A program made the position numbers and the translations under genes. From the IMG/VR virus record IMGVR_UViG_3300050821_002957, positions 310,001 through 374,000 of that record: a DNA stretch of 64,000 bases. One strand, given 5' to 3'. Shown here in pieces: positions 3,089 through 51,602 of the stretch. The notes beneath the pieces were generated by a model that was not told where the DNA came from, searched no databases, and saw nothing but the letters and a program-made list of their open reading frames with translations. Every line of letters starts with the position of its first letter. Position 1 is the stretch's first letter.

Positions 3089-3124
3089 GCTGCTATTTAG
3101 CAGCATAGAAATCGTTGTCAACTA

Positions 3125-16825: not shown

Positions 16826-16826
16826 T

Positions 16827-29562: not shown

Positions 29563-29592
29563 TTAGATGCAACATTGGTGGTACGATGAGTT

Positions 29593-36515: not shown

Positions 36516-36545
36516 TTGACATTAGATGTATCTAAATGCTAAGAT
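36516..36545 (+). promoter_or_regulatory. Sigma70-type leaderless promoter with perfect TAGATGTATCTA box in spacer
   Basis: TTGACA-N18-TAAGAT, ATG 6 nt downstream. Confidence 0.75.
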
Positions 36546-37514: not shown

Positions 37515-37531
37515 TACCTCTTGCGTTTTTT
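37499..37531 (+). terminator. Rho-independent terminator overlapping the next promoter
   Basis: GCAAGAGGTA-GCGTAA-TACCTCTTGC-GTTTTTT; TTGCGT-N18-TACAGT promoter overlaps it. Confidence 0.8.
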
Positions 37532-37557: not shown

Positions 37558-38553
37558 ATGACGCTTCCGACATCGAAAACAGAATTTGCAGTCGTCTATT
37601 TCCCTTTTCAATGTAGTAACCTTCTTGCTTGTCACTCAAGCATCTTAAAGGACGCAGCACAAACTCACAACAGAATTGTCATTGCACTTCCTGTTCGCCG
37701 GATCTCACCATCAAAAGATTCTCCGTTGGATTTTGTGACTCGCCAACAGATGATCCAACAACAATTTCAGAATGCTATTATTGTCCCGGTGGTAGATACC
37801 AAATATCCCCAGAACAAAGTTAAGGCGCTTGAAACTGCGGTCGCTGCTCCATTTTCAGAAATGCGTGGGAAGTGCGATTTGTACACCGATGTCAATTTTG
37901 CAAACCTGTATCGGGCGCATGGTGGGAAATGGCAATGTGCGGATCTGGCTCAGGATGTTTTCGTACAGGAAGCGGCGAATCGAAAACGAGTTCAATTCAA
38001 TATCGGAATGGCACAGGATTTCAAATTGGCCGATGTTCAGCACGCCTACCGGATCGGCCTCATTAAAGGTCTGAACGACCAATTTCCAATCTCATGGACC
38101 ACCGTCGATATTTGCATCAAGCGAGTGATCAACGGTAAAACTTTTATTCTACTCGGTAAGAAACCAGGAGAGAATGGTTGGCGCTTTCCTGGTGGATTTA
38201 AAGATCGTGGCGACATGAGCTTCGAGATTGCTGTTATTCGTGAAGCCAGTGAAGAAATTCTTAAACCCGGCGTCAATCCAGTCAATACATTGATGTTCCC
38301 GGAATACATAGGCAGCAAGAACGTTGATGACTGGCGCTACAAAGGTGAGATCGACGGCATCAACACGCTGTTCTATCAGGTCACGTTTATTGGCGAAGAC
38401 GACGACATCAAAGCTGGGGACGATCTTGCAGAAGCCGAGTGGTTTGAGTTGACCAGAATTGATCCTCCTATTCTCGAAGGCGAACATTTGAATCTGTACA
38501 ACATGCTTCTAGTGCATGAAGGAATGACACATGAAAAATCCACTGGCAAATAA
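37558..38553 (+). CDS. NadM-Nudix-like protein (degenerate NMN adenylyltransferase fold plus ADP-ribose pyrophosphatase-type Nudix)
   Basis: FQ...H, SPLDFVTRQQMI; TVDI, WRFPGGF, REASEE, AGDDLAEAEWF. Confidence 0.8.
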   Translation: MTLPTSKTEFAVVYFPFQCSNLLACHSSILKDAAQTHNRIVIALPVRRISPSKDSPLDFVTRQQMIQQQFQNAIIVPVVDTKYPQNKVKALETAVAAPFSEMRGKCDLYTDVNFANLYRAHGGKWQCADLAQDVFVQEAANRKRVQFNIGMAQDFKLADVQHAYRIGLIKGLNDQFPISWTTVDICIKRVINGKTFILLGKKPGENGWRFPGGFKDRGDMSFEIAVIREASEEILKPGVNPVNTLMFPEYIGSKNVDDWRYKGEIDGINTLFYQVTFIGEDDDIKAGDDLAEAEWFELTRIDPPILEGEHLNLYNMLLVHEGMTHEKSTGK

Positions 38554-38923
38554 AGCCGACTGGACCCTTGTCGGTCACTTCGGAGTTGACGCTGGTCTCT
38601 GTTGGATTGGAGATCCATGTTACGTCCTTCATACTTCCGAAATGAAAGACGGAAAAGACGTACCAACACCATTACCAGAGACACTCGGAAAAGACTGGAG
38701 TGCATTCTGCAATCTACTCGATGGTTCTTATCCGACGTTGAAGAGCTTCAACTACGAGGCAGGCCATGAAGGTCTTGGGGTCTGTGTATCGACCGGCTTT
38801 GGTGACGGCACCTATCCAGTGTACGCTCTCATTCAAGAAGAGGGCACCTGGGGCAAACGAGTAGCAGCGATCTTTATTGATTTTTTTGGATTGCTGGAAG
38901 ATGGCGCTGAAGACGAAGATTGA
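38531..38923 (+). CDS. DUF4241-like protein
   Basis: GVDAG...DPCY...STGFGDGTYPVY. Confidence 0.6.
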   Translation: MKNPLANKADWTLVGHFGVDAGLCWIGDPCYVLHTSEMKDGKDVPTPLPETLGKDWSAFCNLLDGSYPTLKSFNYEAGHEGLGVCVSTGFGDGTYPVYALIQEEGTWGKRVAAIFIDFFGLLEDGAEDED

Positions 38924-38924
38924 C

Positions 38925-38954
38925 TTGACAATAGACACATCTTCCTGATAGGAT
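38925..38954 (+). promoter_or_regulatory. Sigma70-type promoter of the NAD genes with TAGACACATCTT box
   Basis: TTGACA-N18-TAGGAT, ATG 8 nt downstream. Confidence 0.7.
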
Positions 38955-38962
38955 CTAACTAA

Positions 38963-40186
38963 ATGAATCTACAAAATCCCAAATTGGTTGACAAAATCCA
39001 CAAGACACCAACGAAAGTAGTTCTTTTCGTAACAGGTGGTGGTCTGGAAATTTTCCAAACCTTGACTCATCGTGGCGGCGGCTCGGCTACGCTCCTGTCC
39101 GGGCTGATTCCGTATGACACTCAAGAGACCATCGAATTGCTTGGTGGAGTCCCAGAAAAACTGGTCAGTGAGAAAACTACACGAGAGATGGCAATGGTGG
39201 CCTTCCAGCGTGCTCTGAAGCTCTCAAAAGGCGAATACCCAGTCATAGGCGTGGCGGCGTCGGCAGTGCTTCAGAAGACGCCGTATGAGCGTGAAGGTCG
39301 AAAGCATTTTGTCTATGCTGCACTCCAGACCGACACTAAGACGGTTTCCTGTGTTCTGGACCTACATGATGGTATTGCAGAACCAAAAGACACCGGACCA
39401 ATTCCACCGGATCATGGTGTAGGATTGCGAATCATGGAAGAAATGATCACAGCCAATTTGATTCTGAATTTGATTGCCGAAGGTTGTGGACTGGAAGAAC
39501 GAATTACTCTTGGTTATGGTGTCGAAGACGATCTGACCCGGCGTGAATCGACCTTGACCGGAATTTCGATCAACAAAATCATGAGTGGTCATCCAGTTTC
39601 GTTCGACTTGGGCAAAGACACCAAAAAAATTGAAACCGCCACATTCAGTTCGACTAGTTACCGAAACATTTTCCCAGGTCGATTCAATCCGATCCATGCT
39701 GATCATTGGGAGATGTGCGCTCTCGCCTGCGAACAATTTGGTTTCGTCGAATTTGAAATCTCCATTGGCAATGTCGAAAAACCCACATTGGATTTGATTT
39801 CTCTCGAAGAGACGCTGAAGCAATTCTGCCAAGAAAGAACGCCACCATTGCCAGTTTACTTCAGAGTGTGGGTGACCAATGCTCCCACTTTTGTCCAGAA
39901 AGCCGACATGTTTCCGGGCGCAACGTTCATTGTTGGCTATGACACAGCAAAACGTATTTGCGACCCAAAGTATGCCGGAAACATCGAAGAAGTAATGGAA
40001 GTGTTCAAAAAAAATGACGTTGATTTCCTGGTGTTCGGACGTGAACTGAATGGAGTCTATAAAGCTGATGTTAGTGAATTTCCGACTTCGTTTCGACAGA
40101 TTGTTGTTACGAATACTGAGCCACGTCAGTACTCAAATATCTCTTCTTCAGAGATCCGTCGCCGCACGTCAGAAGGGCATGAATGA
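38963..40186 (+). CDS. CinA/PncC-like domain fused to a NadD-type (NMN/NaMN) adenylyltransferase domain
   Basis: N: VTGGG...GGSATLL...PY...VSEKTTREMA; C: FPGRFNPIHADH, F.VGYDTA.R, ISSSEIR. Confidence 0.78.
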   Translation: MNLQNPKLVDKIHKTPTKVVLFVTGGGLEIFQTLTHRGGGSATLLSGLIPYDTQETIELLGGVPEKLVSEKTTREMAMVAFQRALKLSKGEYPVIGVAASAVLQKTPYEREGRKHFVYAALQTDTKTVSCVLDLHDGIAEPKDTGPIPPDHGVGLRIMEEMITANLILNLIAEGCGLEERITLGYGVEDDLTRRESTLTGISINKIMSGHPVSFDLGKDTKKIETATFSSTSYRNIFPGRFNPIHADHWEMCALACEQFGFVEFEISIGNVEKPTLDLISLEETLKQFCQERTPPLPVYFRVWVTNAPTFVQKADMFPGATFIVGYDTAKRICDPKYAGNIEEVMEVFKKNDVDFLVFGRELNGVYKADVSEFPTSFRQIVVTNTEPRQYSNISSSEIRRRTSEGHE

Positions 40187-40352
40187 GCTAAAGGCTTTGA
40201 TGTACGTCTACCGAAAGGAATGGAAAGCCTGTCGGTTAAAAGTTAAGGCAACAAATCGGCAAATGGTTTTGCTGAAGCATAAGTTGAGAAAAGAAATGTT
40301 CAGACAGAAAAGAATTCAGAATAGAATGGAGAGAAGACAAAATGCCAGCTAA
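40179..40352 (+). CDS. Small basic protein
   Basis: Overlaps both neighbours. Confidence 0.5.
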   Translation: MNELKALMYVYRKEWKACRLKVKATNRQMVLLKHKLRKEMFRQKRIQNRMERRQNAS

Positions 40353-41877
40353 CACAGCATGGAGAATGCAAAACGGACTTGATGGCTTCAAGTATCCTCG
40401 TGGTTCGAGTGAGCGCATGATGCCGAAGCGCACGGACGGCTACAAACCTTCGCACTGGATGTTCGAGGAAGACGGCGTGACCGAGTGTTATGACTACCTC
40501 ACCAGCCGTGGCGGTATGTTTCAAGACCTGACGATGTTTGGAGCACAGTCCATCGTCATGAAGTACTTCTTGGGATGTGTCGTAACCCCGGAACAAGTTC
40601 GACGTGCTCGCAAATTTTATAAGAGTTATTACGGCATGGACGGCGTGTTCAACTACGAAGCGTGGATGGACATTGCGACTCGTCTCGAAGGTCGCTTGCC
40701 TCTAGAATTCTGGGCGCTGCCTGAAGGCATGAGCGGCATTCCAGTTCAGACGCCGATGATGGCCTACGTCAACACCGATCCGAAGCACGCCCATCTGTCT
40801 GGCTACGTCGAGCCGCTGACGTTCAAGGTGTGGAATACAATCACCGTGGCGTCGTTGTCACAGCACATCAAGAAAATCATCTATCAGTTCCTCGTCGAGA
40901 CCGGCACGCCCGAAGACATCATTTGGAAGCTGCATGACTTCGGTTACCGTGGTGTTTCGAGCGAAGAGTCCGCTGAATTTGCTGGGGCCGCACACCTTCT
41001 GAATTTCTGGGGCAGCGACACCATTCCGGCTATCGATCACATCAACGAATTTTACTCGGATGGTGTGTTCGACGAAGATGGTGACCCTACCTACATGCCT
41101 GCCTTCAGCGTCCGTGCCACAGAGCACAGCATCATGACGCAGAATGGCCGCAATGGTGAGTCGGCCATCGTTAAGCGTATCCTTCAAAAGTGCCCGAATG
41201 GGATCATCGCAATGGTCGGCGATAGCTACAACATCTTCGACTTCTCCAGCAAGATCATCGGAACTGAATTCCACACCGAAGTGATCGAGCGTGAAGGTAT
41301 TGTTGTGATTCGCCCGGACAGCGGTGAACCGATTCCGACGATGATGAAAGTGATGTGGGAACTCGGCGAAAAATTCGGCAAGACGGTCAATGACAAGGGC
41401 TACTACAATCTCGGCACAGGCAAGGGTCTGGGCAAGATCAAGGTGCTTCAGGGCGACAAGAACGACTACGATGCTGTCTATAACATGCTCCGTGCCTTCA
41501 AGGGCGCTCAGTGGTCGGCGGATAACATTGCAGCCTTCGGCATGGGTGGCGCACTGTTGCAGGCCAGCACTCGTGATACTCAGAAGATGGCCGTCAAGCT
41601 CTCTTCGCAGACTCGTAATGGCGTCTGGGAAGATATCTTCAAAGATCCGATCACCGATCCTGGCAAGGGTTCCAAGTATGGTCGCTTCGCTGTGACATAC
41701 GAAGAGAATGCTGGTGTACGTCGTATGGTGACCAGTCGTCTGACTCAGAATGGTTCGATTCCGAATGGCAATCTGATGCGGATGATTTCTCGCAACGGTT
41801 ACCTCGCCGTCCATGACAAATTTGAAACGGCTCGTGCTCGTGCGGATGAGTGGATGCCGAAATCCAAAGCAGCTTAA
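40342..41877 (+). CDS. nadV: Nicotinamide phosphoribosyltransferase (NAMPT/NadV family)
   Basis: TDGYKPSH, LHDFGYRGVSS, AAHLLNF.GSDT, ATEHS, VIRPDSG, LQGD, FGMGGALLQ, KDPITDPGK.SK.GR. Confidence 0.93.
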   Translation: MPANTAWRMQNGLDGFKYPRGSSERMMPKRTDGYKPSHWMFEEDGVTECYDYLTSRGGMFQDLTMFGAQSIVMKYFLGCVVTPEQVRRARKFYKSYYGMDGVFNYEAWMDIATRLEGRLPLEFWALPEGMSGIPVQTPMMAYVNTDPKHAHLSGYVEPLTFKVWNTITVASLSQHIKKIIYQFLVETGTPEDIIWKLHDFGYRGVSSEESAEFAGAAHLLNFWGSDTIPAIDHINEFYSDGVFDEDGDPTYMPAFSVRATEHSIMTQNGRNGESAIVKRILQKCPNGIIAMVGDSYNIFDFSSKIIGTEFHTEVIEREGIVVIRPDSGEPIPTMMKVMWELGEKFGKTVNDKGYYNLGTGKGLGKIKVLQGDKNDYDAVYNMLRAFKGAQWSADNIAAFGMGGALLQASTRDTQKMAVKLSSQTRNGVWEDIFKDPITDPGKGSKYGRFAVTYEENAGVRRMVTSRLTQNGSIPNGNLMRMISRNGYLAVHDKFETARARADEWMPKSKAA

Positions 41878-41886
41878 GGAAAACCA

Positions 41887-43086
41887 ATGAGCCATTTTAC
41901 TGTAATGGTTGCGGGAGAAGATGTCGATGTCCTTCTCGCACCCTACCATGAATTTGAATGTACTGGGGAAGATAATCAGTACGTCCAAGACATCGACCAG
42001 ACCGAAGAAGCTCGACAAGAATACGCCGACCACAAAGAAACGGTTGTTCGTCATCTGGCTTCTGGTAAGTTGGTCAAGAAGTTTACGAAAGAAGGCGAAT
42101 ACAAAAAGATGTTCGTCCGTGAACCTACACCAGAAGAATTGGCTCAAATTGGACGCTTTGGTGGCAGCGGCTCCTTGAGCAATGGCCTCAGTTATTATTC
42201 AAAAGATTGGGGTGATGGGTTAGGTTATCGTGCAAAGATCATCATCGTTCCCGAAGGCTACGAAGAAGTCGAAGTGCCTTGTTCTGAAGTGATGACGTTC
42301 GCCGAATTTATCGAGTATTGGTACGGGCGCAAGACGGTGCCTGAAGGCCGGGAACCAAATTTGAAGCGGCAACACAAGTACGGCTATGCGGTCGTAAATG
42401 AAGATGGTGAGGTCATTAAAGTCATTGACCGCACCAATCCCAACAAGAAGTGGGACGGCTATCAAATCGGTGGACGCTGGAACGGTTTCTTCAAGCTGAA
42501 GGAAAACAAAATTGGCATCATCGGTGAACCCGGCTTGCAGTCAATCAGCGAAAACTATAAACCACCTGCTTCAAATCGAGCCGACATCGCACGTAAAGGT
42601 GACATTGATTTCGACGGAATGAAATTTGAATCAGCGACACGAGCAGCACAGAAGTACGATCTGTTTACGTCGATCACCAAAGCTCTTCCGTTGGCGCTTA
42701 CATGGCCCTTGATGTTGGAAAAACACAAGACCGGCGTCGATGCCAAGGGTGAACCTACATACAACTACAGTGTGGCCCGAGACGAATACGGTGCCCAACC
42801 GATGGTTCAGGCGCTTCGTAATCACAAAGACGACGATGTTCGCTGGTGGGATTTGGAAGATTTCATGATGACTCGTCAAGAGTACATCGACCTCAGCGCA
42901 AAACAATCTATCATGACTTACGCCCTTGTCATCGGTGACCAGTGGATTGCTCGTGGACGCATGGGTTGGTTCGGCGTCTCCCTCGACGAGAAAGACGAAT
43001 ACAAAGTTTGGGTAGATCGCTTTCACGAAGCTCTAAACGCATTGCCCGACGATACGCTGTTGACAATTGTGGATTGTCACATATGA
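41887..43086 (+). CDS. Conserved phage hypothetical protein (paralog 1)
   Basis: MSHFTVMV...LAPY...NPNKKWDGYQIGGRW...G.MGWFG...VDCHI. Confidence 0.8.
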   Translation: MSHFTVMVAGEDVDVLLAPYHEFECTGEDNQYVQDIDQTEEARQEYADHKETVVRHLASGKLVKKFTKEGEYKKMFVREPTPEELAQIGRFGGSGSLSNGLSYYSKDWGDGLGYRAKIIIVPEGYEEVEVPCSEVMTFAEFIEYWYGRKTVPEGREPNLKRQHKYGYAVVNEDGEVIKVIDRTNPNKKWDGYQIGGRWNGFFKLKENKIGIIGEPGLQSISENYKPPASNRADIARKGDIDFDGMKFESATRAAQKYDLFTSITKALPLALTWPLMLEKHKTGVDAKGEPTYNYSVARDEYGAQPMVQALRNHKDDDVRWWDLEDFMMTRQEYIDLSAKQSIMTYALVIGDQWIARGRMGWFGVSLDEKDEYKVWVDRFHEALNALPDDTLLTIVDCHI

Positions 43087-43268
43087 GTACAGAAGAAAAC
43101 TCATCGTTGTTGGATTCTGTTGTCAACGAAACGGAGCATCCGACGTACAAACACTCAGAGCCTCCACAGACGACCAACTTATGTCGATGGGAACCATGTA
43201 CATTCATTTTGTTTGGTCTGAACGGTGAAACTCACGAAGAATACCATAAGCGGAAAGGATGTGCCTGA
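43083..43268 (+). CDS. Hypothetical protein
   Basis: Coupled ORF. Confidence 0.5.
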   Translation: MSTEENSSLLDSVVNETEHPTYKHSEPPQTTNLCRWEPCTFILFGLNGETHEEYHKRKGCA

Positions 43269-43564
43269 TGACTCGCAGCAAGTACGTACACAGTGCCGAT
43301 GAATTGCCTCCCGGCGAACATTGGGCTATTATCGAAGGATCATCGTTCACGATCCCTGGTGACGAACGCTCCCGAACGCATCCCGGCCACGGTTATCCCG
43401 AGAGCACGGAACGGTACATCACTTATGAAGCCTTTACCGACAAAACGGAATTTGAGACAGAATTGAAGGCTCGTCTCCGTAGCAAAGGTCAATACAGAAC
43501 AGTCCGGGGAATTCACGTTCAAGTCTACGAAGCAACAACCGAAATTCATCTCAAGGAAAAGTGA
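43259..43564 (+). CDS. Hypothetical protein
   Basis: IPGDERSRTHPGHGYP motif; coupled. Confidence 0.6.
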   Translation: MCLMTRSKYVHSADELPPGEHWAIIEGSSFTIPGDERSRTHPGHGYPESTERYITYEAFTDKTEFETELKARLRSKGQYRTVRGIHVQVYEATTEIHLKEK

Positions 43565-43791
43565 TGCCATTACGACTTCTAATCATCGATGCCAAATGTT
43601 CGGACATGTGCAGCTACGCATTGTCTGTCAACGGTAACGTATTGAAAAATGGAGAGGGTTATGTGCCTTCTCTGATGCCCAACAAAGGCGGCGATTATGT
43701 CAATCTTGCTATTGACATTGACAGTGGGAAGATTTTAAACTGGAAGGTGCCAACAGAGGCAGAACTAGAAAAATTCATCGACGAGATCTAA
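43561..43791 (+). CDS. Hypothetical protein
   Basis: GYVP..MP...GDY..L.IDIDSGKILNWK. Confidence 0.6.
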   Translation: MMPLRLLIIDAKCSDMCSYALSVNGNVLKNGEGYVPSLMPNKGGDYVNLAIDIDSGKILNWKVPTEAELEKFIDEI

Positions 43792-43792
43792 C

Positions 43793-44794
43793 ATGCCTAA
43801 CGGACTACAGATTTTTGGTGGGCGTGCAAACCCCAAATTGACGAATGACATCTGCATTGCGATGGAGCACAAGAACGGTCAGCGAGAGATCAAACAATTT
43901 GCAGATGGAGAAATCTGGATGCAATACACGGACAACATTCGTGGTTCTGATGTCTTCATTGTCCAGCCGACCTGTGCTCCGGTGAACGACAATTTGATGG
44001 AATTGATGCTGATGATCAATGCTGCAAAGTTGGCATCAGCGAAGCGAGTCCAGGTGGTGCTGCCATACTTCGGTTATGCCCGTCAGGATCGCAAGGATCG
44101 CCCCAGAACGCCACTGTCGGCCAAAGTGGTGGCATCCATGCTTGGTTCGCAACGCATCAAGCGTGTACTAACGATGGATTTGCATAGCGCACCAATCCAA
44201 GGATTCTTTGACATTCCTGTTGATCACTTGTATGCTCTACCAGTCTTCATCGACTACATCAAACAAAATTTTGAACTGAGTAATTTGACCATCGTCTCAC
44301 CGGATGCTGGTGGTACGACGAGAGCACGGATGTTGGCAATGAAGCTCGGCCTGCCGCTGGCGATCTTGGATAAGTTTCGTGAAGCTGCCAATGTTGCCGA
44401 AGTTATGAACATCATTGGCGATGTCAAAGGTCGAAATTGTCTCATGATTGATGACATGATCGACACGGCAGGCACGTTGGTCAAGGGTGCAAAAGCTCTA
44501 ATGAATATGGGTGGCGCTCGCAGTGTCGATGCAATAGCAACTCATGGTATCCTTTCCTACGACAAAAAAGAAGACATCTCTGCCCTCGACAAAATTGAAA
44601 ATTCGGTCATCCGAACTGTCACGGTGACGGACACAATTCCACAAGAAGAAAACCTGGGTCGCATCTTACGCAACAATCAGGGTGACGCAATTAGAACCAC
44701 GAAGAAGCTGAAGGTTCTCTCAGTTGCTCCGTTGTTCGCCAAGGCAATCCAAGCTGTCCATAATAACGATTCGGTGAGTGGCCTTTTCGTATGA
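43793..44794 (+). CDS. prs: Ribose-phosphate pyrophosphokinase (PRPP synthetase)
   Basis: FADGE, PYFGYARQDRK, MDLH, VSPDAGG, DDMIDTAGTL. Confidence 0.95.
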   Translation: MPNGLQIFGGRANPKLTNDICIAMEHKNGQREIKQFADGEIWMQYTDNIRGSDVFIVQPTCAPVNDNLMELMLMINAAKLASAKRVQVVLPYFGYARQDRKDRPRTPLSAKVVASMLGSQRIKRVLTMDLHSAPIQGFFDIPVDHLYALPVFIDYIKQNFELSNLTIVSPDAGGTTRARMLAMKLGLPLAILDKFREAANVAEVMNIIGDVKGRNCLMIDDMIDTAGTLVKGAKALMNMGGARSVDAIATHGILSYDKKEDISALDKIENSVIRTVTVTDTIPQEENLGRILRNNQGDAIRTTKKLKVLSVAPLFAKAIQAVHNNDSVSGLFV

Positions 44795-44919
44795 TGATTC
44801 ATGTTCCTGATGAATTGCTTCGAGAGTTGGGATTGGACCCAGAATGTTGGGATGAATGCCAGGAAGAAGTAGTTTCAATTTTAGAAGATGTAGCCGAAGA
44901 AGAATCTGAAGACTTTTAA
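44791..44919 (+). CDS. Small highly acidic protein (42 aa)
   Basis: ATGA-coupled to prs; MMIHVPDELLRELGLDPECWDECQEE... Confidence 0.5.
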   Translation: MMIHVPDELLRELGLDPECWDECQEEVVSILEDVAEEESEDF

Positions 44920-44922
44920 TTT

Positions 44923-45627
44923 ATGAGCCATTTTACCGTACTCGTTATTACTCCCAACGGTACGGAGCAGGAAGCCGAAGCTCTGCTTGCTCCATACTGT
45001 GAACACACCGAAGTAGAACCTTACCAGACTCAGTGTTGGTGTGTCGGCATCAATGCTAGGAAATCAGTTCGAGAAGCTGTCACCCTCGAAATGCCCATTG
45101 AAAAGGCCAGAGATGAATTCTTGGCCCGAGAAGATGTCTGCAATCTGATCGAAGAATCCAAAAAGGCCGGAAATTATGGATTTTCTGAAGAAGTAGATAG
45201 GTTATGGGACGAGCGATTTGACAAACCTTTTGAACTTCGAGAAAAGGAATTGCTTGCTGCTCGGCCTGATCGTGATGCAGCAGATCCGACTTGCGATGAA
45301 TGCAAAGGCACCGGCATCGAGACGACAACGTACAATCCTCGGTCAAAATGGGATTGGTACGAACTTGGTGGTCGTTGGTGGGACCTGCTTGCGGTTTTTC
45401 AAGGTGAACCTGTTTCCAAATTTCTAGAAGCCAAAGGTGAAGACGATCAACCGTTCCGCACCTTTGCGATCATTACTCCTGACGGACAGTGGCTCGAAGC
45501 TGGTAAATTGCTTTGTTTCGCTGTTGTCGCCGAAGAAAAAGATCCTAGAGAATGGGAAGCCTGCTATAACGAAACACTAGACAAATATCGAGACCATAGG
45601 GCATTGTTTTACGATTGCCATATTTGA
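44923..45627 (+). CDS. Conserved phage hypothetical protein (paralog 2)
   Basis: MSHFTVLV...LAPY...YNPRSKWDWYELGGRW...YDCHI. Confidence 0.8.
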   Translation: MSHFTVLVITPNGTEQEAEALLAPYCEHTEVEPYQTQCWCVGINARKSVREAVTLEMPIEKARDEFLAREDVCNLIEESKKAGNYGFSEEVDRLWDERFDKPFELREKELLAARPDRDAADPTCDECKGTGIETTTYNPRSKWDWYELGGRWWDLLAVFQGEPVSKFLEAKGEDDQPFRTFAIITPDGQWLEAGKLLCFAVVAEEKDPREWEACYNETLDKYRDHRALFYDCHI

Positions 45628-45648
45628 ACACTGTGCTATGATACTCGT

Positions 45649-46719
45649 ATGTCCGTCGAAAACGACAAAACGGGTCTTCTGGATCGGGATTCATTTCGTA
45701 ATGGGGTGTTTCTGCGTGACGGGTACAAGTGTGTAATCTGTGGTGCCTCTGGCGTGCGTTTAGACGCTCACCACATCATCGAAAGACGCCTATGGGATGA
45801 TGGTGGCTATTATCTGGACAATGGCGCTACGCTCTGCGATGAGGGTCTTGCTCATCACATGCGTGCGGAGGAAACAGTTCTTACTTGTGACCAGATCCGC
45901 ACTGCCGCAAACATCAAACGAGTAATCATTCCTGACCATCTGTACAACGACTATAATTACGATAAATGGGGCAATATTCTCAACCCGGACGGCAGTCGCA
46001 CCAAAGGCGAACTGTTCAACGACGAATCGGTCCAGAAGGTTCTAAAAGCTGGCGGCGTCCTTGATCAATTTCGAGCATATGTTAAATATCCTCGGACATA
46101 TCATCTTCCTTGGTCACCCGGTCTGACTGACGATGATCGAATGTTGCCCTCGACCAAAATATTTGAAGGTCGTGAAGTTGTCGTTACTGAGAAGATGGAC
46201 GGCGAGAATACGACGCTCTATCGTGACTACATGCACGCTCGGTCTCTTGAAGAAGAGCATCATGAAAGTCGGGGATGGGTGAAAAAACTTCATGCCGAAA
46301 TCTGTTGGAACATTCCTGAGGGCTGGCGCATCTGTGGTGAAAATTTGTATGCGCTTCATTCTGTAGGATATCAAAACCTTCTTTCTTATTTCTTAGTTTT
46401 TTCAATTTGGGATCAAAATAACATCTGCCAGTCGTGGGATGATACAGTAGAGTATGCAGCAGTGCTCGGCCTGCAAATGGTTCCGGTGATCTATCGAGGA
46501 ATTTGGGATGAACGTCTGGTAAAGTCTTTTTCGGATAGCATTGATACTAAAAAGCAGGAAGGTTATACCGTTCGTGTGACTGATGCCTTTGCTTATGGTT
46601 CTTTCCGAAAATCGATTGCAAAATGGGTCCGCAAAGGTCACGTCCAGACGACGCATAATTGGAAAATGAGATCGGTAGTAAAAAATGGGCTAAGTCATGA
46701 AACCAAAGTTGCAACCTAA
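45649..46719 (+). CDS. HNH domain fused to an ATP-dependent RNA ligase domain
   Basis: RDGYKCVICG...DAHHI...NGATLC; KYPRTYHLPWS, TEKMDGEN, CGENL, EGY, AKWVR. Confidence 0.85.
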   Translation: MSVENDKTGLLDRDSFRNGVFLRDGYKCVICGASGVRLDAHHIIERRLWDDGGYYLDNGATLCDEGLAHHMRAEETVLTCDQIRTAANIKRVIIPDHLYNDYNYDKWGNILNPDGSRTKGELFNDESVQKVLKAGGVLDQFRAYVKYPRTYHLPWSPGLTDDDRMLPSTKIFEGREVVVTEKMDGENTTLYRDYMHARSLEEEHHESRGWVKKLHAEICWNIPEGWRICGENLYALHSVGYQNLLSYFLVFSIWDQNNICQSWDDTVEYAAVLGLQMVPVIYRGIWDERLVKSFSDSIDTKKQEGYTVRVTDAFAYGSFRKSIAKWVRKGHVQTTHNWKMRSVVKNGLSHETKVAT

Positions 46720-47047
46720 AGGCACACCTGCTTTGAACGTAATCATGACTGAACATGCCGTCTTGCGAATGCGTGAACGGATGCCAGATGATTTTACTTT
46801 CCCAACCATTGGATCTTACGTGCGCCTGCTGACGATGCAGGACACCTATCACGATCTAAATCTAGAACTGTTACGTCTAAAAGGCGGCATTGTAATCGGA
46901 AAGTGGAATGGGTCGCATTTGGCTGTTGTCACTATGTTTTCAGAAAAAACATTTCATCGTTTTCAGAAGAGACAAAAATCCAGGTTTCAACCGCTTAACA
47001 CGACCTGTTACCTGCTCAATAACATCATTTTTCCAAAGGCAGCGTAG
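46697..47047 (+). CDS. Hypothetical protein
   Basis: TEHAVLRMRER...VVT. Confidence 0.55.
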   Translation: MKPKLQPKGTPALNVIMTEHAVLRMRERMPDDFTFPTIGSYVRLLTMQDTYHDLNLELLRLKGGIVIGKWNGSHLAVVTMFSEKTFHRFQKRQKSRFQPLNTTCYLLNNIIFPKAA

Positions 47048-47062
47048 CGATACATAGTTCAT

Positions 47063-47347
47063 GTGTCAGAACAGAAAAGTGGAATCGAGGTCAAGGTCAT
47101 TGATTGGGGCAACGATCAACGTGAAGTCGCCATTCATTTCCTGGACCTAAATCAGATGCTCACCCTGAACCCGGCAGGCGCTCGAACATTTGCATTTCGT
47201 CTGATGGAGTGCGCCGATTTTCTTGAACCACCATTCGCTGACGACTCTCAAAAATTGCTAGAAGATCCCAACGACAACTCAGAATCCGAACGTTTCTTTG
47301 GTCCCTATGAAGATGATGAGGAGGACGAAGCCGACGAAGGATATTGA
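47063..47347 (+). CDS. Hypothetical acidic protein
   Basis: GTG 6 nt after ATACATA late-like motif. Confidence 0.55.
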   Translation: MSEQKSGIEVKVIDWGNDQREVAIHFLDLNQMLTLNPAGARTFAFRLMECADFLEPPFADDSQKLLEDPNDNSESERFFGPYEDDEEDEADEGY

Positions 47348-47384
47348 CACATCTATTGACATTGAAAAATAGATGTAGTAAAGT
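47344..47384 (+). promoter_or_regulatory. Leaderless sigma70-type promoter with two TAGAT-N2-ATCTA-like boxes
   Basis: TTGACA-N17-TAAAGT; boxes at 47344 and 47370. Confidence 0.65.
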
Positions 47385-47390
47385 TGAGCT

Positions 47391-47594
47391 ATGATTCCTG
47401 TTATGGAGATGCAAAAGACCGTATCGATTACGGCGGAAGAAAAATGGAAGCAAGGCGGAATGGATCAGCAGATTCGTCTTGAAATGTTGGCGGTCATCGG
47501 TCAACCTCGTTGCTATGCCAGCGAGTCCTGGAAGAAGTTACCCCACGTCCTGAAACTCAATCTCAGTGCCCGAAAATGGACCCAAAAAAGTTGA
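47391..47594 (+). CDS. Hypothetical protein
   Basis: Directly behind promoter. Confidence 0.6.
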   Translation: MIPVMEMQKTVSITAEEKWKQGGMDQQIRLEMLAVIGQPRCYASESWKKLPHVLKLNLSARKWTQKS

Positions 47595-47640
47595 TGTAGC
47601 TACTTGACATTGGCGTCGTTCCAATGTTAAGATACATCTA
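47591..47640 (+). promoter_or_regulatory. Leaderless sigma70-type promoter with two boxes
   Basis: TTGACA-N18-TAAGAT; TTGATGTAGCTA upstream, AAGATACATCTA over the start site. Confidence 0.7.
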
Positions 47641-47972
47641 TGAGATACGAAATCTGGACCAACGAGACGAACGATCCGGCCAGGGAATATTTTGGGTTTG
47701 ACGGGTATCGTCCCGGCGCTCACATGAAGCTGGCTTATTCCAATCTGATCGCTTCCAATCCTGATGCTCACGATGCTGCACTTGAGCGCCTTTTCGAGAA
47801 GTTTAACATCGACCAACCGGCTGATTATAAAGCACATTCTCTTAGTGTCGGTGATGTGGTTGTGCTTATCGATTCCGGTGTCCGTACTGCATACGCCTGT
47901 GAATCGTGCGGTTGGAAGGCACTTTTGGTTTTCGATCCGACCTTGAAGAATCCGGCCTGGGGGACACGATGA
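47640..47972 (+). CDS. YodL-like domain protein
   Basis: LERLFEKFNIDQPADYKAHSLSVGDVVVL...AY.C...GW. Confidence 0.75.
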   Translation: MRYEIWTNETNDPAREYFGFDGYRPGAHMKLAYSNLIASNPDAHDAALERLFEKFNIDQPADYKAHSLSVGDVVVLIDSGVRTAYACESCGWKALLVFDPTLKNPAWGTR

Positions 47973-48235
47973 GAATCAAGATCGAGTACCGTGACAGTAC
48001 AAACGTTGCGGCAGCGCTGGTGAAGGCTGGCATGAAAGCAGCAGCAAAGGGATACGATGAGTTTCGATTTGGCAAAACTCCCGATGTACTGATTTTCTCG
48101 GTCAAGAAACGTTGCCCTCGCTGCGGCGGAAACAAGTACATTCTCGGCGTTGTCGGACCCGGCACAGGACCTCAGAATCGTGACATCGGCAGCATTCCTT
48201 GTCCTGAGTGTAACAAGAAAGCGAAGAGCAAATGA
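47969..48235 (+). CDS. Hypothetical zinc-finger protein
   Basis: CPRCGG...CPEC. Confidence 0.55.
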   Translation: MRIKIEYRDSTNVAAALVKAGMKAAAKGYDEFRFGKTPDVLIFSVKKRCPRCGGNKYILGVVGPGTGPQNRDIGSIPCPECNKKAKSK

Positions 48236-48486
48236 CCCCGGATCGTCTGGTTAGTTCTCTTTCAAAAGCCTTGGATGTCGTCAATGTCCAGGTCATCAAT
48301 CACATTCATAACCGGCACACTCGGGTCAAGATTTGCGCCCGTCGCACCCAGAAATTTGGTAATATTACATTGTCGGCGTCTCCCAGCGACTTCAATGTTC
48401 AACGTCAACGAGAACGTCAGATCCGAAAGGAACTTCAGCGACTCGGCGTCGAAAATTACGACAAGTTTTGCTGGCGCACCGTATGA
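48232..48486 (+). CDS. Hypothetical protein
   Basis: Coupled ORF. Confidence 0.55.
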   Translation: MTPDRLVSSLSKALDVVNVQVINHIHNRHTRVKICARRTQKFGNITLSASPSDFNVQRQRERQIRKELQRLGVENYDKFCWRTV

Positions 48487-48641
48487 TTGTGATTTTCTTG
48501 CTCTGGATTTTTGGGATTTATCTTTCGGTTGGTATTTCCATAGCACTTCCTGCCTGGGATGACATCAAGAGATTGGCAGGGGGACCGCTGGTATTTGCAA
48601 TGGTTGTCTTTCTGTGGCCGTTACAATTTTCGGTAGAGTGA
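48483..48641 (+). CDS. Small membrane protein
   Basis: Hand-read hydrophobic 52-aa ORF, ATGA-coupled. Confidence 0.5.
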   Translation: MIVIFLLWIFGIYLSVGISIALPAWDDIKRLAGGPLVFAMVVFLWPLQFSVE

Positions 48642-48644
48642 CCT

Positions 48645-48794
48645 ATGAAATGGATCATGTTATTTTTGAACGGTATGATCGTTTTAGGAATTGTTTTTTC
48701 TATGTTACTCTATGGCTTCTTGATTTACGACGAACTGAAATGGGAAGCCGCTGACCAACAGTGGAAACACGCATTACAACAGGAGATTCAGTGA
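48645..48794 (+). CDS. Small membrane protein
   Basis: Hand-read 49-aa ORF; stop overlaps the nadK GTG. Confidence 0.5.
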   Translation: MKWIMLFLNGMIVLGIVFSMLLYGFLIYDELKWEAADQQWKHALQQEIQ

Positions 48795-49582
48795 AATTTT
48801 TCATCTTCTCGAACTTACTCGGCATTGCTCGTGATCCAGTCTATCAGGAGATCGTTAAATTCCTGAAAGAGATCGGTGCAGAACAGACTTTCAATTACGA
48901 AGAAGCCGTTATCAGTATTGTTCTCGGAGGCGACGGCACAGTTCTCGGAGCCGCACGAGCCGGAATTAAAAGTCCGATGCTGATTGTCAACACCGGCCAT
49001 ATGGGTTTTCTCACTTCGACCAAAGAACTTTTCAAAGAGAAAATTCAGGCGGCATACGACGGCAAGTTCACAACGACAGAACGACACATGCTCGACGTAA
49101 TGCAAGAGTCGAACATGGATGAGCCACTCAACGCTTTGAATGATGTCGTCATCAAGTCTAGCGCCCATTCCAAACTCATTCGCCTGGGCGTCTACGTCGT
49201 CAATAGCGAAGGCGTCGAGGATTTGGTGTCTGAGTACCGGGCAGATGGTCTGATCGTCGCTACGCCCACAGGATCGACGGCGTACAACATCTCAGCAGGT
49301 GGCCCGATCATTCACCCAAGTTGCCAGTCGTTCGTAGTGACACCGATTTGTCCGCAGGGATTAACGTACCGGCCCATCGTTCTGCCTTCGTATCTGAGTC
49401 TTCGTGTGAAACCGATGGAGCTTGGCTTATTCATGACCATTGACGGCCAGATCGAGCGAGCGTTGGACATGACGGCGATCTCAGTGAAGTACAATTCGGC
49501 CAAAATTGCGACAGTCGATCCCGATGGTTCTTATTTTCAGGTCTTGCGTGAAAAGATGGCTTGGGGTAAAATGCCAATATGA
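48791..49582 (+). CDS. nadK: NAD kinase
   Basis: LGGDGT, VNTGHMGFL, ALND, ADGLIVATPTGSTAYNISAGGPI; AGGAG before GTG 48791. Confidence 0.93.
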   Translation: MKFFIFSNLLGIARDPVYQEIVKFLKEIGAEQTFNYEEAVISIVLGGDGTVLGAARAGIKSPMLIVNTGHMGFLTSTKELFKEKIQAAYDGKFTTTERHMLDVMQESNMDEPLNALNDVVIKSSAHSKLIRLGVYVVNSEGVEDLVSEYRADGLIVATPTGSTAYNISAGGPIIHPSCQSFVVTPICPQGLTYRPIVLPSYLSLRVKPMELGLFMTIDGQIERALDMTAISVKYNSAKIATVDPDGSYFQVLREKMAWGKMPI

Positions 49583-51482: not shown

Positions 51483-51602
51483 AAATGTATTTAGTGACCG
51501 CCTTGGAGATTCGGTTTATAGATGGAAAAATCAGCCATGTCATCCAACCGACATATCCACCGATAATCAAAATCGCAACAAAAGTTCCGCAGAATTGTGC
51601 AA

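What the first reader, a model, noticed from the sequence alone, without database searches (positions are those of the whole stretch)
37558..49582. Candidate complete NAD+/NADP+ reconstitution pathway from ADP-ribose and nicotinamide
Seen: within 12 kb on one strand are a NadM-Nudix-like gene, a CinA-NMNAT fusion, NAMPT, a canonical-looking PRPP synthetase and an NAD kinase. Established: SIR2/TIR-type defence NADases split NAD+ into ADPR and nicotinamide, and phages counter with NARP1 (Adps+Namat) or NARP2 (Nampt+Nmnat); KVP40 has NadV plus NMNAT-Nudix. Inference: here both products could be recycled in a closed loop: ADPR -> (Nudix) R5P+AMP -> (Prs) PRPP -> (NAMPT) NMN -> (NMNAT) NAD+ -> (NadK) NADP+. 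That would free the phage from host PRPP and also restore NADP+, going beyond the two-gene NARPs. Alternatively Prs/NAMPT act as a NARP1 pair running beside a NARP2 arm.
Basis: partly seen in the sequence, partly recalled or inferred. Interest (0 to 1): 0.88.

Follow-up and report, generated by a model that had tools for sequence, protein, structure and literature searches.

The report
Extended phage NAD(P) salvage gene island
A 405-kb T4-like jumbo phage carries a conserved gene island that, by homology, can rebuild NAD+ and NADP+ from nicotinamide and probably ADP-ribose; it is a larger, self-supplying version of a known phage trick against NAD-destroying bacterial defences.

Summary
All five genes sit on the + strand at the stated coordinates:
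- a NadM-Nudix homologue (37558-38553)
- a CinA-fold/NMNAT fusion (38963-40186)
- NAMPT (40342-41877)
- a class I PRPP synthetase (43793-44794)
- an NAD kinase (48761-49582)

The same collinear set recurs in four other divergent T4-like metagenomic phage contigs, always between regA and the DNA polymerase gene.

Prs keeps the C-terminal module and the scores of canonical PRPS. NAMPT lacks the Namat adenine-clamp aromatic residues.

Two refinements:
- The NadM-like N-domain of the Nudix protein has lost both NMNAT signature motifs.
- The CinA-like domain of the fusion lacks the Lys of the deamidase Ser/Lys dyad, so the fusion's C-terminal domain is the likely working NMNAT.

Prs is missing in one sister lineage. 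Prs has also joined NAMPT/Nudix clusters in other phage lineages.

The closed ADPR-to-NAD(P) loop and the counter-defence role remain inferences. NAMPT+NMNAT salvage in jumbo phages and the ADPR-to-PRPP recycling idea in bacteria are already published. This is therefore a new variant of a known kind, namely NARP2 plus Prs, Nudix and NadK.

The parts
36552..37514 (+). 320-aa protein of unknown function, conserved directly upstream of the Nudix gene in relatives. It has its own sigma-70-like promoter (36516-36545) and terminator-like hairpin (37498-37525).
   Evidence: PHROG unknown-function families only. 56% identical homologue at the same position in L005. 327-aa gene upstream of Nudix in the ENA contig. 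Promoter and terminator scan.
37558..38553 (+). NadM-Nudix homologue. The N-terminal NMNAT-like domain has lost its signature motifs. The C-terminal domain is an intact Nudix hydrolase and the predicted ADP-ribose pyrophosphatase.
   Evidence: Pfam NUDIX over residues 190-307. Foldseek top hits 2R5W/2QJT/2QJO over about 355 columns. Alignment A2: R-E-x2-E-E is invariant, while HxGH and SGT-x-R are kept only in distant members.
38531..38923 (+). DUF4241 protein (130 aa), overlapping the end of the Nudix gene by 23 nt. Role unknown.
   Evidence: PF14025 at 28.9 bits. Present at the same place in the ENA contig and in L004.
38963..40186 (+). Fusion of a CinA/PncC-fold domain (about residues 1-200, without the deamidase Lys) and a NadD-type NMN/NaMN adenylyltransferase (about 235-407, motifs intact). 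It is the predicted working NMNAT. A promoter-like site lies at 38925-38954.
40342..41877 (+). Nicotinamide phosphoribosyltransferase of the PRPP-using Nampt type, not Namat.
   Evidence: 265-279 bits to human and Xanthomonas Nampt structures against 136-160 bits to Namat structures; the reverse holds for the Adele Namat. Clamp-helix motif without aromatic residues. Tree.
41887..43086 (+). 399-aa member of a very large family of unknown function (phrog_10079). Present here only, not in the related modules, so it is probably an inserted passenger gene.
43793..44794 (+). Class I ribose-phosphate pyrophosphokinase (PRPP synthetase), not Adps. A promoter-like site lies at 43712-43741.
   Evidence: NF002320 at 409 bits against a cut-off of 297. 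End-to-end match to 3DAH, 4S2U, 1DKR and human PRPS1. 45% identity to E. coli Prs against 28% to Adps. Adps controls. Alignment A5. Tree.
44923..45627 (+). 234-aa paralogue of the 399-aa protein. Function unknown.
45649..46719 (+). RNA ligase (PF09414) with an N-terminal HNH nuclease module. It is the most conserved gene of the island (69-81% identity in relatives).
   Evidence: The ENA relative carries a LAGLIDADG domain in the same gene.
48761..49582 (+). NAD kinase (GTG start).
   Evidence: Pfam NAD_kinase and NAD_kinase_C above cut-off. The G-G-D-G, N-D/E-V-V and T-P-T-G-S-T-A motifs are invariant in A4. Present in every related module.
49661..50521 (-). Calcineurin-like metallophosphoesterase, weakly LpxH-like. 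It is a conserved neighbour of NadK in relatives.
50518..50958 (-). Small stand-alone Nudix hydrolase (146 aa), a conserved neighbour.
51603..52115 (-). NT5C-like 5'(3')-deoxyribonucleotidase, a conserved neighbour just before the DNA polymerase gene.

Best explanation
This is an extended NARP2-type NAD(P)+ salvage and reconstitution island. It sits between regA and the family-B DNA polymerase gene of a T4-like jumbo phage.

Proposed flow:
1. Nicotinamide + PRPP gives NMN (NAMPT).
2. NMN + ATP gives NAD+ (C-terminal adenylyltransferase domain of the CinA-like fusion).
3. NAD+ + ATP gives NADP+ (NadK).
4. PRPP is made on site from ribose-5-phosphate by a canonical class I Prs.
5. Ribose-5-phosphate can be drawn from ADP-ribose by the Nudix domain of the NadM-like protein.

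Both products of SIR2/TIR-type NADases could therefore be recycled without draining host PRPP.

Shown here by computation:
- the enzyme identities and folds
- intact catalytic motifs
- loss of the NMNAT motifs in the NadM-like domain
- loss of the deamidase Lys in the CinA-like domain
- conserved synteny

Inferred:
- the substrates
- closure of the loop through ADPR
- early expression
- the counter-defence role
For: Identities.

Prs is canonical:
- NF002320 scores 409 bits for the window and 428 bits for L005, matched to profile position 314/316.
- Two Adps controls score about 100 bits and end near position 260.
- The C-terminal a11-a12 segment is present in the window Prs and absent from Adps (criterion from PMC13586617).
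- K194, R196, the R-Q-D-R motif and D220/D221/D224 are invariant.

NAMPT is Nampt-like:
- Reciprocal PDB scores.
- The clamp-helix positions that are F392 and Y396 in the SPbeta-L1 Namat are both Ala here (criterion from PMC12774641).
- The tree separates the Namats at 100% support.

NMNAT: the G-x-F-x-P-x-H-x-x-H and S-S-x-x-x-R motifs are conserved (H248, S394, S395 and R399 invariant, H245 in at least 90%) across 38 family members.

Division of labour:
- Wherever the fusion is present, the adjacent NadM-type Nudix protein has lost HxGH or the whole N-domain.
- A phage without the fusion in the 21-kb stretch read (L169) keeps an intact NadM-Nudix next to NAMPT and Prs.

Linkage:
- The five-gene set is collinear in L003, L004/L012, L005 and an ENA contig.
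- L003 adds an adenylate kinase inside the island, which fits AMP recycling.
- Prs has joined NAMPT/Nudix clusters in at least three lineages: the window clade, L021/L061 and L169.

Context:
- An Acb1-domain anti-CBASS gene lies 10 kb downstream.
- Osterman et al. state that PRPP consumption is the cost of NARP2.
- Sigma-70-like promoters with a perfect -35 hexamer sit in the gaps before several island genes.
Against: - There is no biochemical evidence for any step.
- Nudix substrate specificity cannot be read from sequence. The best matches are ADPR pyrophosphatases, but at only 16-18% identity.
- Prs is absent from the otherwise complete island of L013/L014, so the loop is not obligatory for the clade.
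- The adenylyltransferase domain is structurally NadD-like. NadD enzymes usually prefer NaMN.
- NadK scores below every NCBIfam equivalog cut-off.
- The island could serve general cofactor supply rather than defence evasion, as proposed for 'NAD-jumbo phages' (PMC11662467).
- Only 64 kb of the 405-kb genome was visible, so other NAD genes such as NadE, PncA, PnuC or NadR cannot be excluded.
Confidence: 0.6

Rival explanations
1. The island is a general auxiliary metabolic island. It raises NAD(P) supply for the phage's own NAD(P)-dependent enzymes and nucleotide synthesis in slow or nutrient-limited hosts, with no specific link to NADase defences.
For: - Published view of 'NAD-jumbo phages' and freshwater 'NAD-salvage islands' (PMC11662467; PMC13573597).
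- The window encodes a UDP-glucose dehydrogenase and a saccharopine-dehydrogenase-like NADP-binding protein.
- NARP2 raises NAD+ even without a defence system.
- NadK fits a demand for NADPH in dNTP synthesis (inference).
Against: - An ADPR-type Nudix linked to Prs is hard to explain unless ADPR is abundant, and the normal source of ADPR is NAD+ cleavage (PMC2330246).
- KVP40 Nampt+Nmnat were shown to counter Thoeris and other NADase systems.
- An Acb1-domain counter-defence gene lies nearby.
- The two readings are not exclusive.
Confidence: 0.25
2. Prs and NAMPT are a NARP1 pair: Adps makes ADPR-PP and Namat joins it to nicotinamide. This pair runs beside a NARP2 arm.
For: Both NARP1 enzymes are homologues of Prs and Nampt, and generic models annotate them identically. 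NF006629 scores Namats at 460 bits and the window enzyme at 414 bits.
Against: - The window Prs keeps the C-terminal module that all Adps lack. It scores 409 against about 100 bits on NF002320 and is 45% identical to E. coli Prs against 28% to Adps.
- The window NAMPT scores 265-279 bits against Nampt structures and 136-160 against Namat structures. It has Ala at both clamp-helix aromatic positions.
- The two genes are not adjacent. They are 1.9 kb apart with three ORFs between them, and in the opposite order to NARP1.
Confidence: 0.03
3. The fusion is a true PncC-NadD enzyme. NMN is deamidated to NaMN and adenylylated to NaAD, and host or phage NadE finishes NAD+.
For: - The N-domain has the CinA/PncC fold and the C-domain a NadD fold.
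- JGI annotates relatives as NaMN adenylyltransferase / PncC.
- Phosphate-binding positions equivalent to PncC S46 and Y56 are kept (S41, Y51).
- Position 24 is Thr or Ser in 33 of 38 members.
Against: - The general-base Lys (E. coli K61, A. tumefaciens K63) is essential for activity (PMC5384747). Its counterpart here is Thr, Leu, Met or Ser in 36 of the 38 members and is never one of the six commonest residues as Lys.
- Making NMN with NAMPT only to deamidate it is wasteful.
- The neighbouring NadM domain decays exactly where the fusion is present, which suggests the fusion took over NMN adenylylation.
- No NadE was found among the ORFs scanned in the window.
Confidence: 0.12
4. The Nudix domain does not feed the pathway. 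Either it trims NAD(H)/ADPR levels as a homeostatic valve, or it destroys ADPR-derived immune signals such as Thoeris cyclic ADPR isomers or ADPR-1''-P. In that case Prs simply supplies PRPP from the host pentose-phosphate pool.
For: - Iyer et al. propose that phage Nudix domains regulate NAD+ levels and target low-molecular-weight ADPR derivatives (PMC9503650).
- A second small Nudix and an LpxH-like phosphoesterase are conserved next to NadK, which hints at broader nucleotide-diphosphate processing.
- L013/L014 keep the Nudix gene but lack Prs.
Against: - The closest structures are ADPR pyrophosphatases of NadM-Nudix enzymes and the ADPR-binding NrtR domain.
- Nudix, NAMPT and Prs co-cluster in three separate lineages.
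- Hydrolysis of ADPR yields R5P whatever the 'purpose', so the two readings overlap.
Confidence: 0.25

Closest known systems
NARP2 (Nampt + Nmnat, prototype Vibrio phage KVP40 NadV/NatV; Osterman et al., bioRxiv 10.1101/2024.02.11.579819)
   Same: - A PRPP-type Nampt (36% identical to KVP40 NadV) is encoded beside an NMN adenylyltransferase and a NadM-family Nudix domain.
- The phage is T4-like, as is KVP40.
- The expected chemistry is the same: Nam to NMN to NAD+.
   Different: - The NMNAT is a NadD-fold domain fused to a CinA-fold domain, not the NadM domain.
- The NadM domain survives only as a motif-less shell on the Nudix protein.
- A canonical Prs and an NAD kinase are part of the island.
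- GenBank phages have no close relative of the fusion. The best match is 24% identity in one megaphage.
NARP1 (Adps + Namat)
   Same: - It uses homologous folds (PRPS-like and Nampt-like).
- It recycles ADPR and nicotinamide.
- It is often flanked by an RNA ligase, a phosphoesterase and ADPR-handling genes, as in phage Adele.
   Different: - Here ADPR would be split to AMP + R5P and rebuilt through PRPP and NMN. That is four enzymes and more ATP, against direct pyrophosphorylation of ADPR.
- Both defining sequence features of NARP1 enzymes are absent.
Bacterial NrtR-controlled prs-nadV (and nadM-Nudix) operons (Rodionov et al. 2008, PMC2330246)
   Same: - A dedicated Prs paralogue is linked to NadV.
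- The explicit proposal is that ADPR, cleaved by a Nudix enzyme, supplies ribose-5-phosphate for PRPP and hence NAD.
   Different: - No NrtR regulator is present.
- The setting is a phage genome.
- NadK is added.
- The NMNAT function is split.
- Some bacterial prs-nadV pairs have since been suggested to be NARP1-like (PMC12774641). The pair here is canonical.
'NAD-jumbo phages' and jumbophage 'NAD-salvage islands' (PMC11662467; PMC13573597)
   Same: Large phages with physically clustered NAMPT and NMNAT(-Nudix) genes, interpreted as autonomous NAD+ synthesis and possible counter-defence.
   Different: Neither main text mentions PRPP synthetase or NAD kinase, and PMC11662467 does not mention Nudix or NADP either. 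The full content of the Flavobacterium-phage islands could not be checked, because the supplement is not held.
NARP3 (PnuC + NadR; PMC13464706)
   Same: Another phage route that rebuilds NAD+ to defeat Sir2-HerA.
   Different: It imports nicotinamide riboside. No PnuC or NadR homologue was seen among the window ORFs scanned.

Membership tests
NARP2 | Nampt of the PRPP-preferring kind, in the KVP40 NadV clade rather than the Namat clade | tested here: met
   - 258 bits and 36% identity to KVP40 NadV, against 113-122 bits to two Namats.
- Namats split off at 100% support.
- Reciprocal PDB scores.
- No clamp aromatic residues.
NARP2 | An Nmnat with intact nucleotidyltransferase motifs encoded with the Nampt | tested here: met
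   The fusion gene ends 156 nt upstream of NAMPT. The H-x-x-H and S-S-x-x-x-R motifs are conserved (H248, S394, S395, R399 invariant; H245 in at least 90%) in 38 members. NadD fold.
NARP2 | The Nmnat is the NadM-type domain of a bifunctional NMNAT-Nudix protein, as in KVP40 NatV | tested here: not met
   The NadM-like domain has lost HxGH and SGT-x-R. NMNAT activity is assigned to a different protein.
NARP2 | Produces NAD+ and counters NADase defences | not testable with these tools
   Needs enzyme assays and infection assays.
NARP1 (Adps) | PRPS-like enzyme lacking the C-terminal a11-a12 module and showing Adps-type divergence | tested here: not met
   The C-terminal segment is present. NF002320 scores 409 bits against about 100 for Adps. 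Tree.
NARP1 (Namat) | Selectivity-clamp helix with two aromatic residues (F392 and Y396 of the SPbeta-L1 Namat) | tested here: not met
   The window and four relatives have Ala at both positions, where the Namats compared have an aromatic at the first and Tyr, Phe or Cys at the second.
Class I PRPP synthetase | Full-length match above the curated cut-off, plus the catalytic loop Lys/Arg, the R-Q-D-R motif and the ribose-5-phosphate loop D-D-x-x-D-T | tested here: met
NadM-Nudix bifunctional NMNAT / ADPR pyrophosphatase | Two-domain fold | tested here: met
   Foldseek hits 2R5W, 2QJT and 2QJO over both domains at E 1e-16 to 1e-12. The next hits are at 6e-9.
NadM-Nudix bifunctional NMNAT / ADPR pyrophosphatase | NMNAT motifs G-R-F-Q-x-x-H-x-G-H and S-G-T-x-x-R | tested here: not met
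   Both are degenerate in the window clade but kept in distant family members.
NadM-Nudix bifunctional NMNAT / ADPR pyrophosphatase | Catalytic Nudix box R-E-x2-E-E | tested here: met
   R228, E229, E232 and E233 are invariant in 32 sequences.
NadM-Nudix bifunctional NMNAT / ADPR pyrophosphatase | ADP-ribose as the substrate | not testable with these tools
   Supported only by homology to ADPR pyrophosphatases and to the ADPR-bound NrtR domain.
CinA/PncC NMN deamidase | CinA C-terminal domain fold | tested here: met
   Foldseek hits 4CT8, 6MR3, 2A9S, 5KOL and 6L19, with target TM-score up to 0.66. Weak profile hits to 2A9S and 4CT8.
CinA/PncC NMN deamidase | Ser/Lys catalytic dyad (A. tumefaciens S31/K63, E. 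coli S29/K61) | tested here: not met
   The Lys position is Thr, Leu, Met or Ser in 36 of 38 members, with Lys not among the six commonest residues. The Ser position is Thr 24, Ser 9, Ala 3 of 38 (criterion from PMC5384747). The alignment to PncC is low-confidence outside the conserved motifs.
NAD kinase | Pfam NAD_kinase N and C domains above the gathering score, plus the G-G-D-G, N-E/D and T-P-T-G-S-T-A motifs | tested here: met
NAD kinase | NCBIfam equivalog cut-off | tested here: not met
   The best score is 168 bits against a cut-off of 309. The protein is a divergent member.

The most novel reading that the evidence does not exclude
The island is a self-sufficient fourth kind of phage NAD+ reconstitution pathway.
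- It rebuilds NAD+ from both NADase products with canonical enzymes.
- It makes its own PRPP, so it avoids the PRPP drain and toxicity reported for NARP2.
- It is the first phage route that also restores NADP+.
- Its NMNAT is a previously uncharacterised architecture, in which a catalytically disabled CinA/PncC domain captures or hands over NMN.
- The old NadM domain persists as a pseudo-enzyme on the ADPR pyrophosphatase.
Probability: 0.4. Interest if true: 0.75.

Novelty: new variant of a known kind. Interest (0 to 1): 0.6.

Why it matters
NAD+ depletion is one of the commonest bacterial anti-phage strategies. The known phage answers (NARP1, NARP2, NARP3) are two-gene systems, each with a known weakness.

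Osterman et al. single out PRPP consumption as the cost of NARP2. An island that brings its own Prs, and probably refills it from ADPR, would remove that cost. It would also work whichever way NAD+ is cut: to ADPR + Nam, or to NMN + AMP.

The NadK gene raises an untested question: is loss of NADP(H), not only NAD+, limiting for phages under NADase attack? NadK is almost absent from sequenced phages.

The island also offers two clean cases of domain decay and replacement (a dead NadM domain and a dead PncC domain). It provides a new, widespread but unstudied CinA-like/NMNAT enzyme family, which also occurs in Methanosarcinales and Planctomycetota. It is also a compact enzyme set for making NAD(P) from cheap precursors.

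Tried and rejected
- Megablast of the 12-kb region against 50,697 GenBank phage records found nothing.
- tRNA scan: none.
- Rfam at gathering scores: none, so no NAD+ riboswitch.
- NF006629 was tried as a Nampt/Namat discriminator. It scores both kinds above its cut-off, so it was dropped.
- The 399-aa and 234-aa paralogues inside the island were examined as possible pathway members. They belong to a family of at least 1,709 hypothetical proteins with no Pfam domain, and they are absent from related islands. They are treated as passengers.
- Cellular loci of the fusion family were searched for an ancestral operon. None of 49 loci had NAMPT, Prs, Nudix or NadK nearby.
- The KVP40 paper (PMC5388814) is not held, and the jumbophage supplement is not held. 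The KVP40 Nudix substrates, and the extra genes that PMC13573597 places in the Flavobacterium-phage islands besides NAMPT and NMNAT-Nudix, therefore could not be checked.
- The 'proline downstream of the Nudix box' rule for ADPRases was considered. I recalled it only from memory and the spacing did not fit cleanly, so it was not used.
- Single-sequence PDB searches of the two fusion proteins gave only marginal hits. Structure prediction was needed.

Full report
**Setting**

The window is bases 300,001-364,000 of IMGVR_UViG_3300050821_002957, a 405,631-bp viral contig. It is a T4-like jumbo phage. Pfam finds:
- UvsW, UvsY, and gp46/gp47-like nuclease subunits
- the gp44/gp62 clamp loader and RegA
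- a family-B DNA polymerase, UvsX and a DnaB-type helicase
- a gp55-like sigma factor

No tRNA genes and no Rfam families were found. Megablast against GenBank phages gave no match. In T4 the gene order is 45-44-62-regA-43 (from my own knowledge). Here about 16 kb of extra genes lie between regA (35507-36010) and the polymerase gene (52208-55102). The finding is the core of that insertion.

**Observation**

All five ORFs are on the + strand at the coordinates given.
- 37558-38553 has a C-terminal NUDIX domain and weak hits to bifunctional NMNAT/Nudix models.
- 38963-40186 has a C-terminal cytidylyltransferase-like/NadD domain.
- 40342-41877 is NAMPT (NAMPT_N + NAPRTase; NF006629 at 414 bits, cut-off 405; phrog_448).
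- 43793-44794 is a ribose-phosphate pyrophosphokinase (three Pfam domains; NF002320 at 409 bits, cut-off 297).
- 48761-49582 is an NAD kinase, with both Pfam domains above threshold.

The two weakly annotated proteins were modelled with family alignments, giving pLDDT 90.6 and 92.8.
- The 407-aa protein has a CinA/PncC fold (4CT8, 6MR3, 2A9S, 5KOL) followed by a NadD-type adenylyltransferase fold (3DV2, 9FYB, 2H2A).
- The 331-aa protein matches the full-length NadM-Nudix enzymes of Francisella and Synechocystis at E 1e-16 to 1e-12. The next hits are at 6e-9.

**More than chance**

Contigs carrying relatives of the fusion protein were looked up. They show the same order in four further distinct phage contigs: Nudix, fusion, NAMPT, Prs, RNA ligase, NadK, then a small Nudix, a metallophosphoesterase, an NT5C-like nucleotidase and the polymerase gene.
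- These contigs are an ENA contig, L003, L004 (= IMG/VR L012) and L005.
- Protein identities to the window range from 38% to 73%.
- One sister lineage (L013/L014) has everything except Prs.
- More distant phages (L021/L022, L061/L062) carry fusion-Nudix-NAMPT-Prs without NadK in range.
- Many carry only fusion + NAMPT.
- L169, a 322-kb contig, carries an intact NadM-Nudix, NAMPT and Prs, with no fusion in the 21-kb stretch read.

Prs has thus been recruited to NAMPT/Nudix clusters in at least three lineages. The fusion family is also common in cellular genomes of Methanosarcinales and Planctomycetota (448 matches). In those genomes, none of 49 loci has NAMPT, Prs, Nudix or NadK within 8 kb. 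The cluster was therefore built in phages, not copied from a cellular operon.

**Prs or Adps?**

The Adps structure paper names loss of the C-terminal a11-a12 module as a family signature of Adps (PMC13586617).
- The window Prs aligns end to end with B. pseudomallei, E. coli, B. subtilis and human PRPS structures at 260-294 bits.
- It is 45% identical to E. coli Prs and 28% identical to the Adps of phages Adele and alia.
- On NF002320 it scores 409 bits and matches to profile position 314/316. The two Adps controls score about 100 bits and stop near position 260.
- Alignment A5 shows that the Adps end about 30 residues earlier. It also shows that the catalytic-loop Lys and Arg, the R-Q-D-R motif and the D-D-x-x-D-T ribose-phosphate loop are invariant.
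- The tree splits the Adps from all island Prs plus E. coli Prs at 100/100 support.

This is a canonical class I PRPP synthetase.

**Nampt or Namat?**

The Namat paper attributes ADPR-PP preference to a selectivity clamp, whose helix contributes two aromatic residues, F392 and Y396 (PMC12774641).
- The chain of 9W5X/9W5W has Phe at 392 and Tyr at 396 in the clamp helix, the positions the paper gives for the SPbeta-L1 Namat, so I take it to be that enzyme. The Adele Namat has Tyr and Cys at the equivalent positions.
- The window enzyme and its four relatives have Ala at both positions.
- The window NAMPT scores 265-279 bits against human and Xanthomonas Nampt and 136-160 bits against the Namat structures.
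- The Adele Namat does the reverse: 344-377 against 164-174 bits.
- In the tree the Namats are a separate clade at 100% support. The window clade sits among the NMNAT-linked Nampts, which include KVP40 NadV.

**Two refinements**

First, the Nudix protein. Its family is small: 54 proteins, all metagenomic.
- In alignment A2 the distant members keep the NadM signatures, G-R-F-Q ... H-x-G-H and S-G-T-x-x-R.
- In the window's clade the first has decayed to P-F-Q with at most one His. The second has decayed to E-x-x-x-R.
- The Nudix catalytic R-E-x2-E-E is invariant.
- Wherever the fusion gene is present, the adjacent NadM-type protein lacks HxGH or lacks the N-domain altogether.
- L169, with no fusion in the region read, keeps an intact NadM-Nudix.

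I infer that the fusion took over NMN adenylylation and that the NadM domain survives as a structural shell.

Second, the CinA-like domain. PncC activity needs a Ser/Lys dyad: S31A and K63A mutants of the A. tumefaciens enzyme are dead (PMC5384747).
- When the family is aligned to E. coli PncC, the phosphate-binding Ser and Tyr are kept (S41, Y51).
- The Lys position is Thr, Leu, Met or Ser in 36 of the 38 sequences, and Lys is not among the six commonest residues there. The Ser position is mostly Thr.
- The alignment is weak outside the motifs, so this point has moderate confidence.
- It argues that the domain binds a nucleotide such as NMN rather than deamidating it.

The C-terminal domain keeps the H-x-x-H and S-S-x-x-x-R motifs in 38 sequences, with H248, S394, S395 and R399 invariant. 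Its NadD-like fold leaves its NMN-versus-NaMN preference open.

**NadK**

The G-G-D-G, N-D/E-V-V and T-P-T-G-S-T-A motifs are invariant in the five island NadKs. Phage NadK is rare.
- Only 32 of 50,697 GenBank phage records match. As far as the record names and sizes suggest, most are bacterial fragments or prophage edges.
- A pattern scan of IMG/VR found nine loci. Five belong to this clade.
- That scan depends on two exact peptide patterns, so it gives a lower bound.

**Mechanism proposed**

1. ADPR to AMP + R5P (Nudix).
2. R5P + ATP to PRPP + AMP (Prs).
3. PRPP + Nam to NMN (NAMPT).
4. NMN + ATP to NAD+ (fusion).
5. NAD+ + ATP to NADP+ (NadK).

Steps 2, 3 and 5 rest on strong homology with intact active sites. 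Step 4 rests on motif conservation and the replacement argument. Step 1, and the coupling of 1 to 2, rest on homology to ADPR pyrophosphatases and on repeated gene linkage.

L003 carries an adenylate kinase inside the island, which fits the two AMP released per turn. Sigma-70-like promoters with a perfect TTGACA hexamer sit in the gaps before the 320-aa gene, the fusion, Prs and the RNA ligase. Strong terminator-like hairpins flank the 320-aa gene. This suggests early, host-polymerase transcription but is only a consensus match.

An Acb1-domain gene lies 10 kb downstream, so the phage does carry a homologue of a known counter-defence protein.

**Comparison with the literature**

- NARP2 is Nampt + Nmnat. 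Osterman et al. note that it drains PRPP and was toxic in E. coli.
- NARP3 is PnuC + NadR.
- NARP1 can be extended by a Macro-domain phosphatase.
- Rodionov et al. (2008) described bacterial prs-nadV operons. They proposed that ADPR, cleaved by a Nudix enzyme, supplies ribose-5-phosphate for PRPP and NAD.
- 'NAD-jumbo phages' with clustered salvage genes were reported in 2024. That text never mentions PRPP, Nudix, NADP or NAD kinase.
- A 2026 paper names 'NAD-salvage islands', with NAMPT and NMNAT-Nudix, in Flavobacterium jumbophages. Their full content could not be checked.
- A search for phage + NAD kinase + nicotinamide phosphoribosyltransferase + pyrophosphokinase found no paper.

The concept and the core are therefore known. 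What appears new:
- the specific five-enzyme phage module with canonical Prs and NadK
- the new NMNAT architecture
- the two decayed domains

**Verdict**

The finding is real, conserved and correctly read in outline. It is a new variant of a known kind, namely NARP2-type salvage extended upstream to ADPR/PRPP and downstream to NADP+. The loop and the defence role are plausible, testable inferences.

Noticed in passing
window 59676-60587 (+): A 303-aa protein with an Acb1 (anti-CBASS) domain: PF23474, 78.6 bits over residues 15-155. The C-terminal half is unannotated.
   Followed up: no
window 45649-46719 (+); L003 16161-17225; L004 14930-15964; ENA contig: The PF09414 RNA ligase is the most conserved gene of the island (69-81% identity). 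It carries an HNH module here and a LAGLIDADG domain in the ENA relative. RNA ligases also sit beside the NARP1 operon of phage Adele (L006) and beside NadM-Nudix in L170. This points to a recurring link between RNA repair and NAD salvage.
   Followed up: partly
window 41887-43086 and 44923-45627 (+): Two paralogues (399 and 234 aa) that both begin M-S-H-F-T-V and end D-C-H-I. They belong to phrog_10079, a family with at least 1,709 metagenomic and some bacterial members. The family has no Pfam domain and no known function. Both are present only in this genome's version of the island.
   Followed up: partly
window 49661-52115 (-): A block conserved between NadK and the polymerase gene in all relatives: an LpxH-like metallophosphoesterase, a 146-aa Nudix, a 175-aa unknown protein and an NT5C-like deoxyribonucleotidase. 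In relatives the first two are on the + strand, so the block is inverted here. Possible extra nucleotide-diphosphate or ADPR-derivative processing.
   Followed up: partly
window 16740-17267 (+): A third Nudix protein (175 aa), just downstream of the gp47/Mre11-like phosphoesterase (15443-16537).
   Followed up: no
window 20465-21802 (+) and 25010-25645 (-): Phage-encoded NAD(P)-dependent enzymes: a full UDP-glucose/GDP-mannose 6-dehydrogenase and a saccharopine-dehydrogenase-like NADP-binding protein. They are possible consumers of the cofactors the island makes.
   Followed up: no
window 724-1872 (-), 2294-3121 (-), 3502-4083 (-): A tyrosyl-tRNA synthetase, a papain-family cysteine protease and an HD_4 (RelA/SpoT-type HD) domain protein, encoded together on the minus strand.
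   Followed up: no
L003 9079-10034 and 13270-13863: In this relative the NadM-like/Nudix gene is split into two ORFs of 174 and 175 aa. An adenylate kinase (PF00406) lies between NAMPT and Prs.
   Followed up: no
L089-L168 (genome contigs): The CinA-like/NMNAT fusion is a widespread, apparently uncharacterised cellular family in Methanosarcinales and Planctomycetota (448 matches among species representatives). It is always without NAD-salvage neighbours. H115, Q122, T127, R156, E159 and E160 are invariant or nearly so (at least 90%), which suggests a conserved site of unknown function in the N-domain.
   Followed up: partly
window 27124-30810 (+): An 812-aa protein without Pfam hits, followed by a MoxR/AAA_5 ATPase. 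The same pair (about 770 aa + AAA_5) precedes the clamp-loader genes in L005 and in the ENA contig.
   Followed up: no
window 36516, 38925, 43712, 45615, 47356, 47604 (+): Sigma-70-like promoters (-35 hexamer TTGACA at five sites, TTGCCA at 45615; 16-18-nt spacer, four of the six with an extended -10 TG) fall in the short gaps just upstream of gene starts. In total 31 sites were found against 20.1 +/- 4.3 in shuffles.
   Followed up: no
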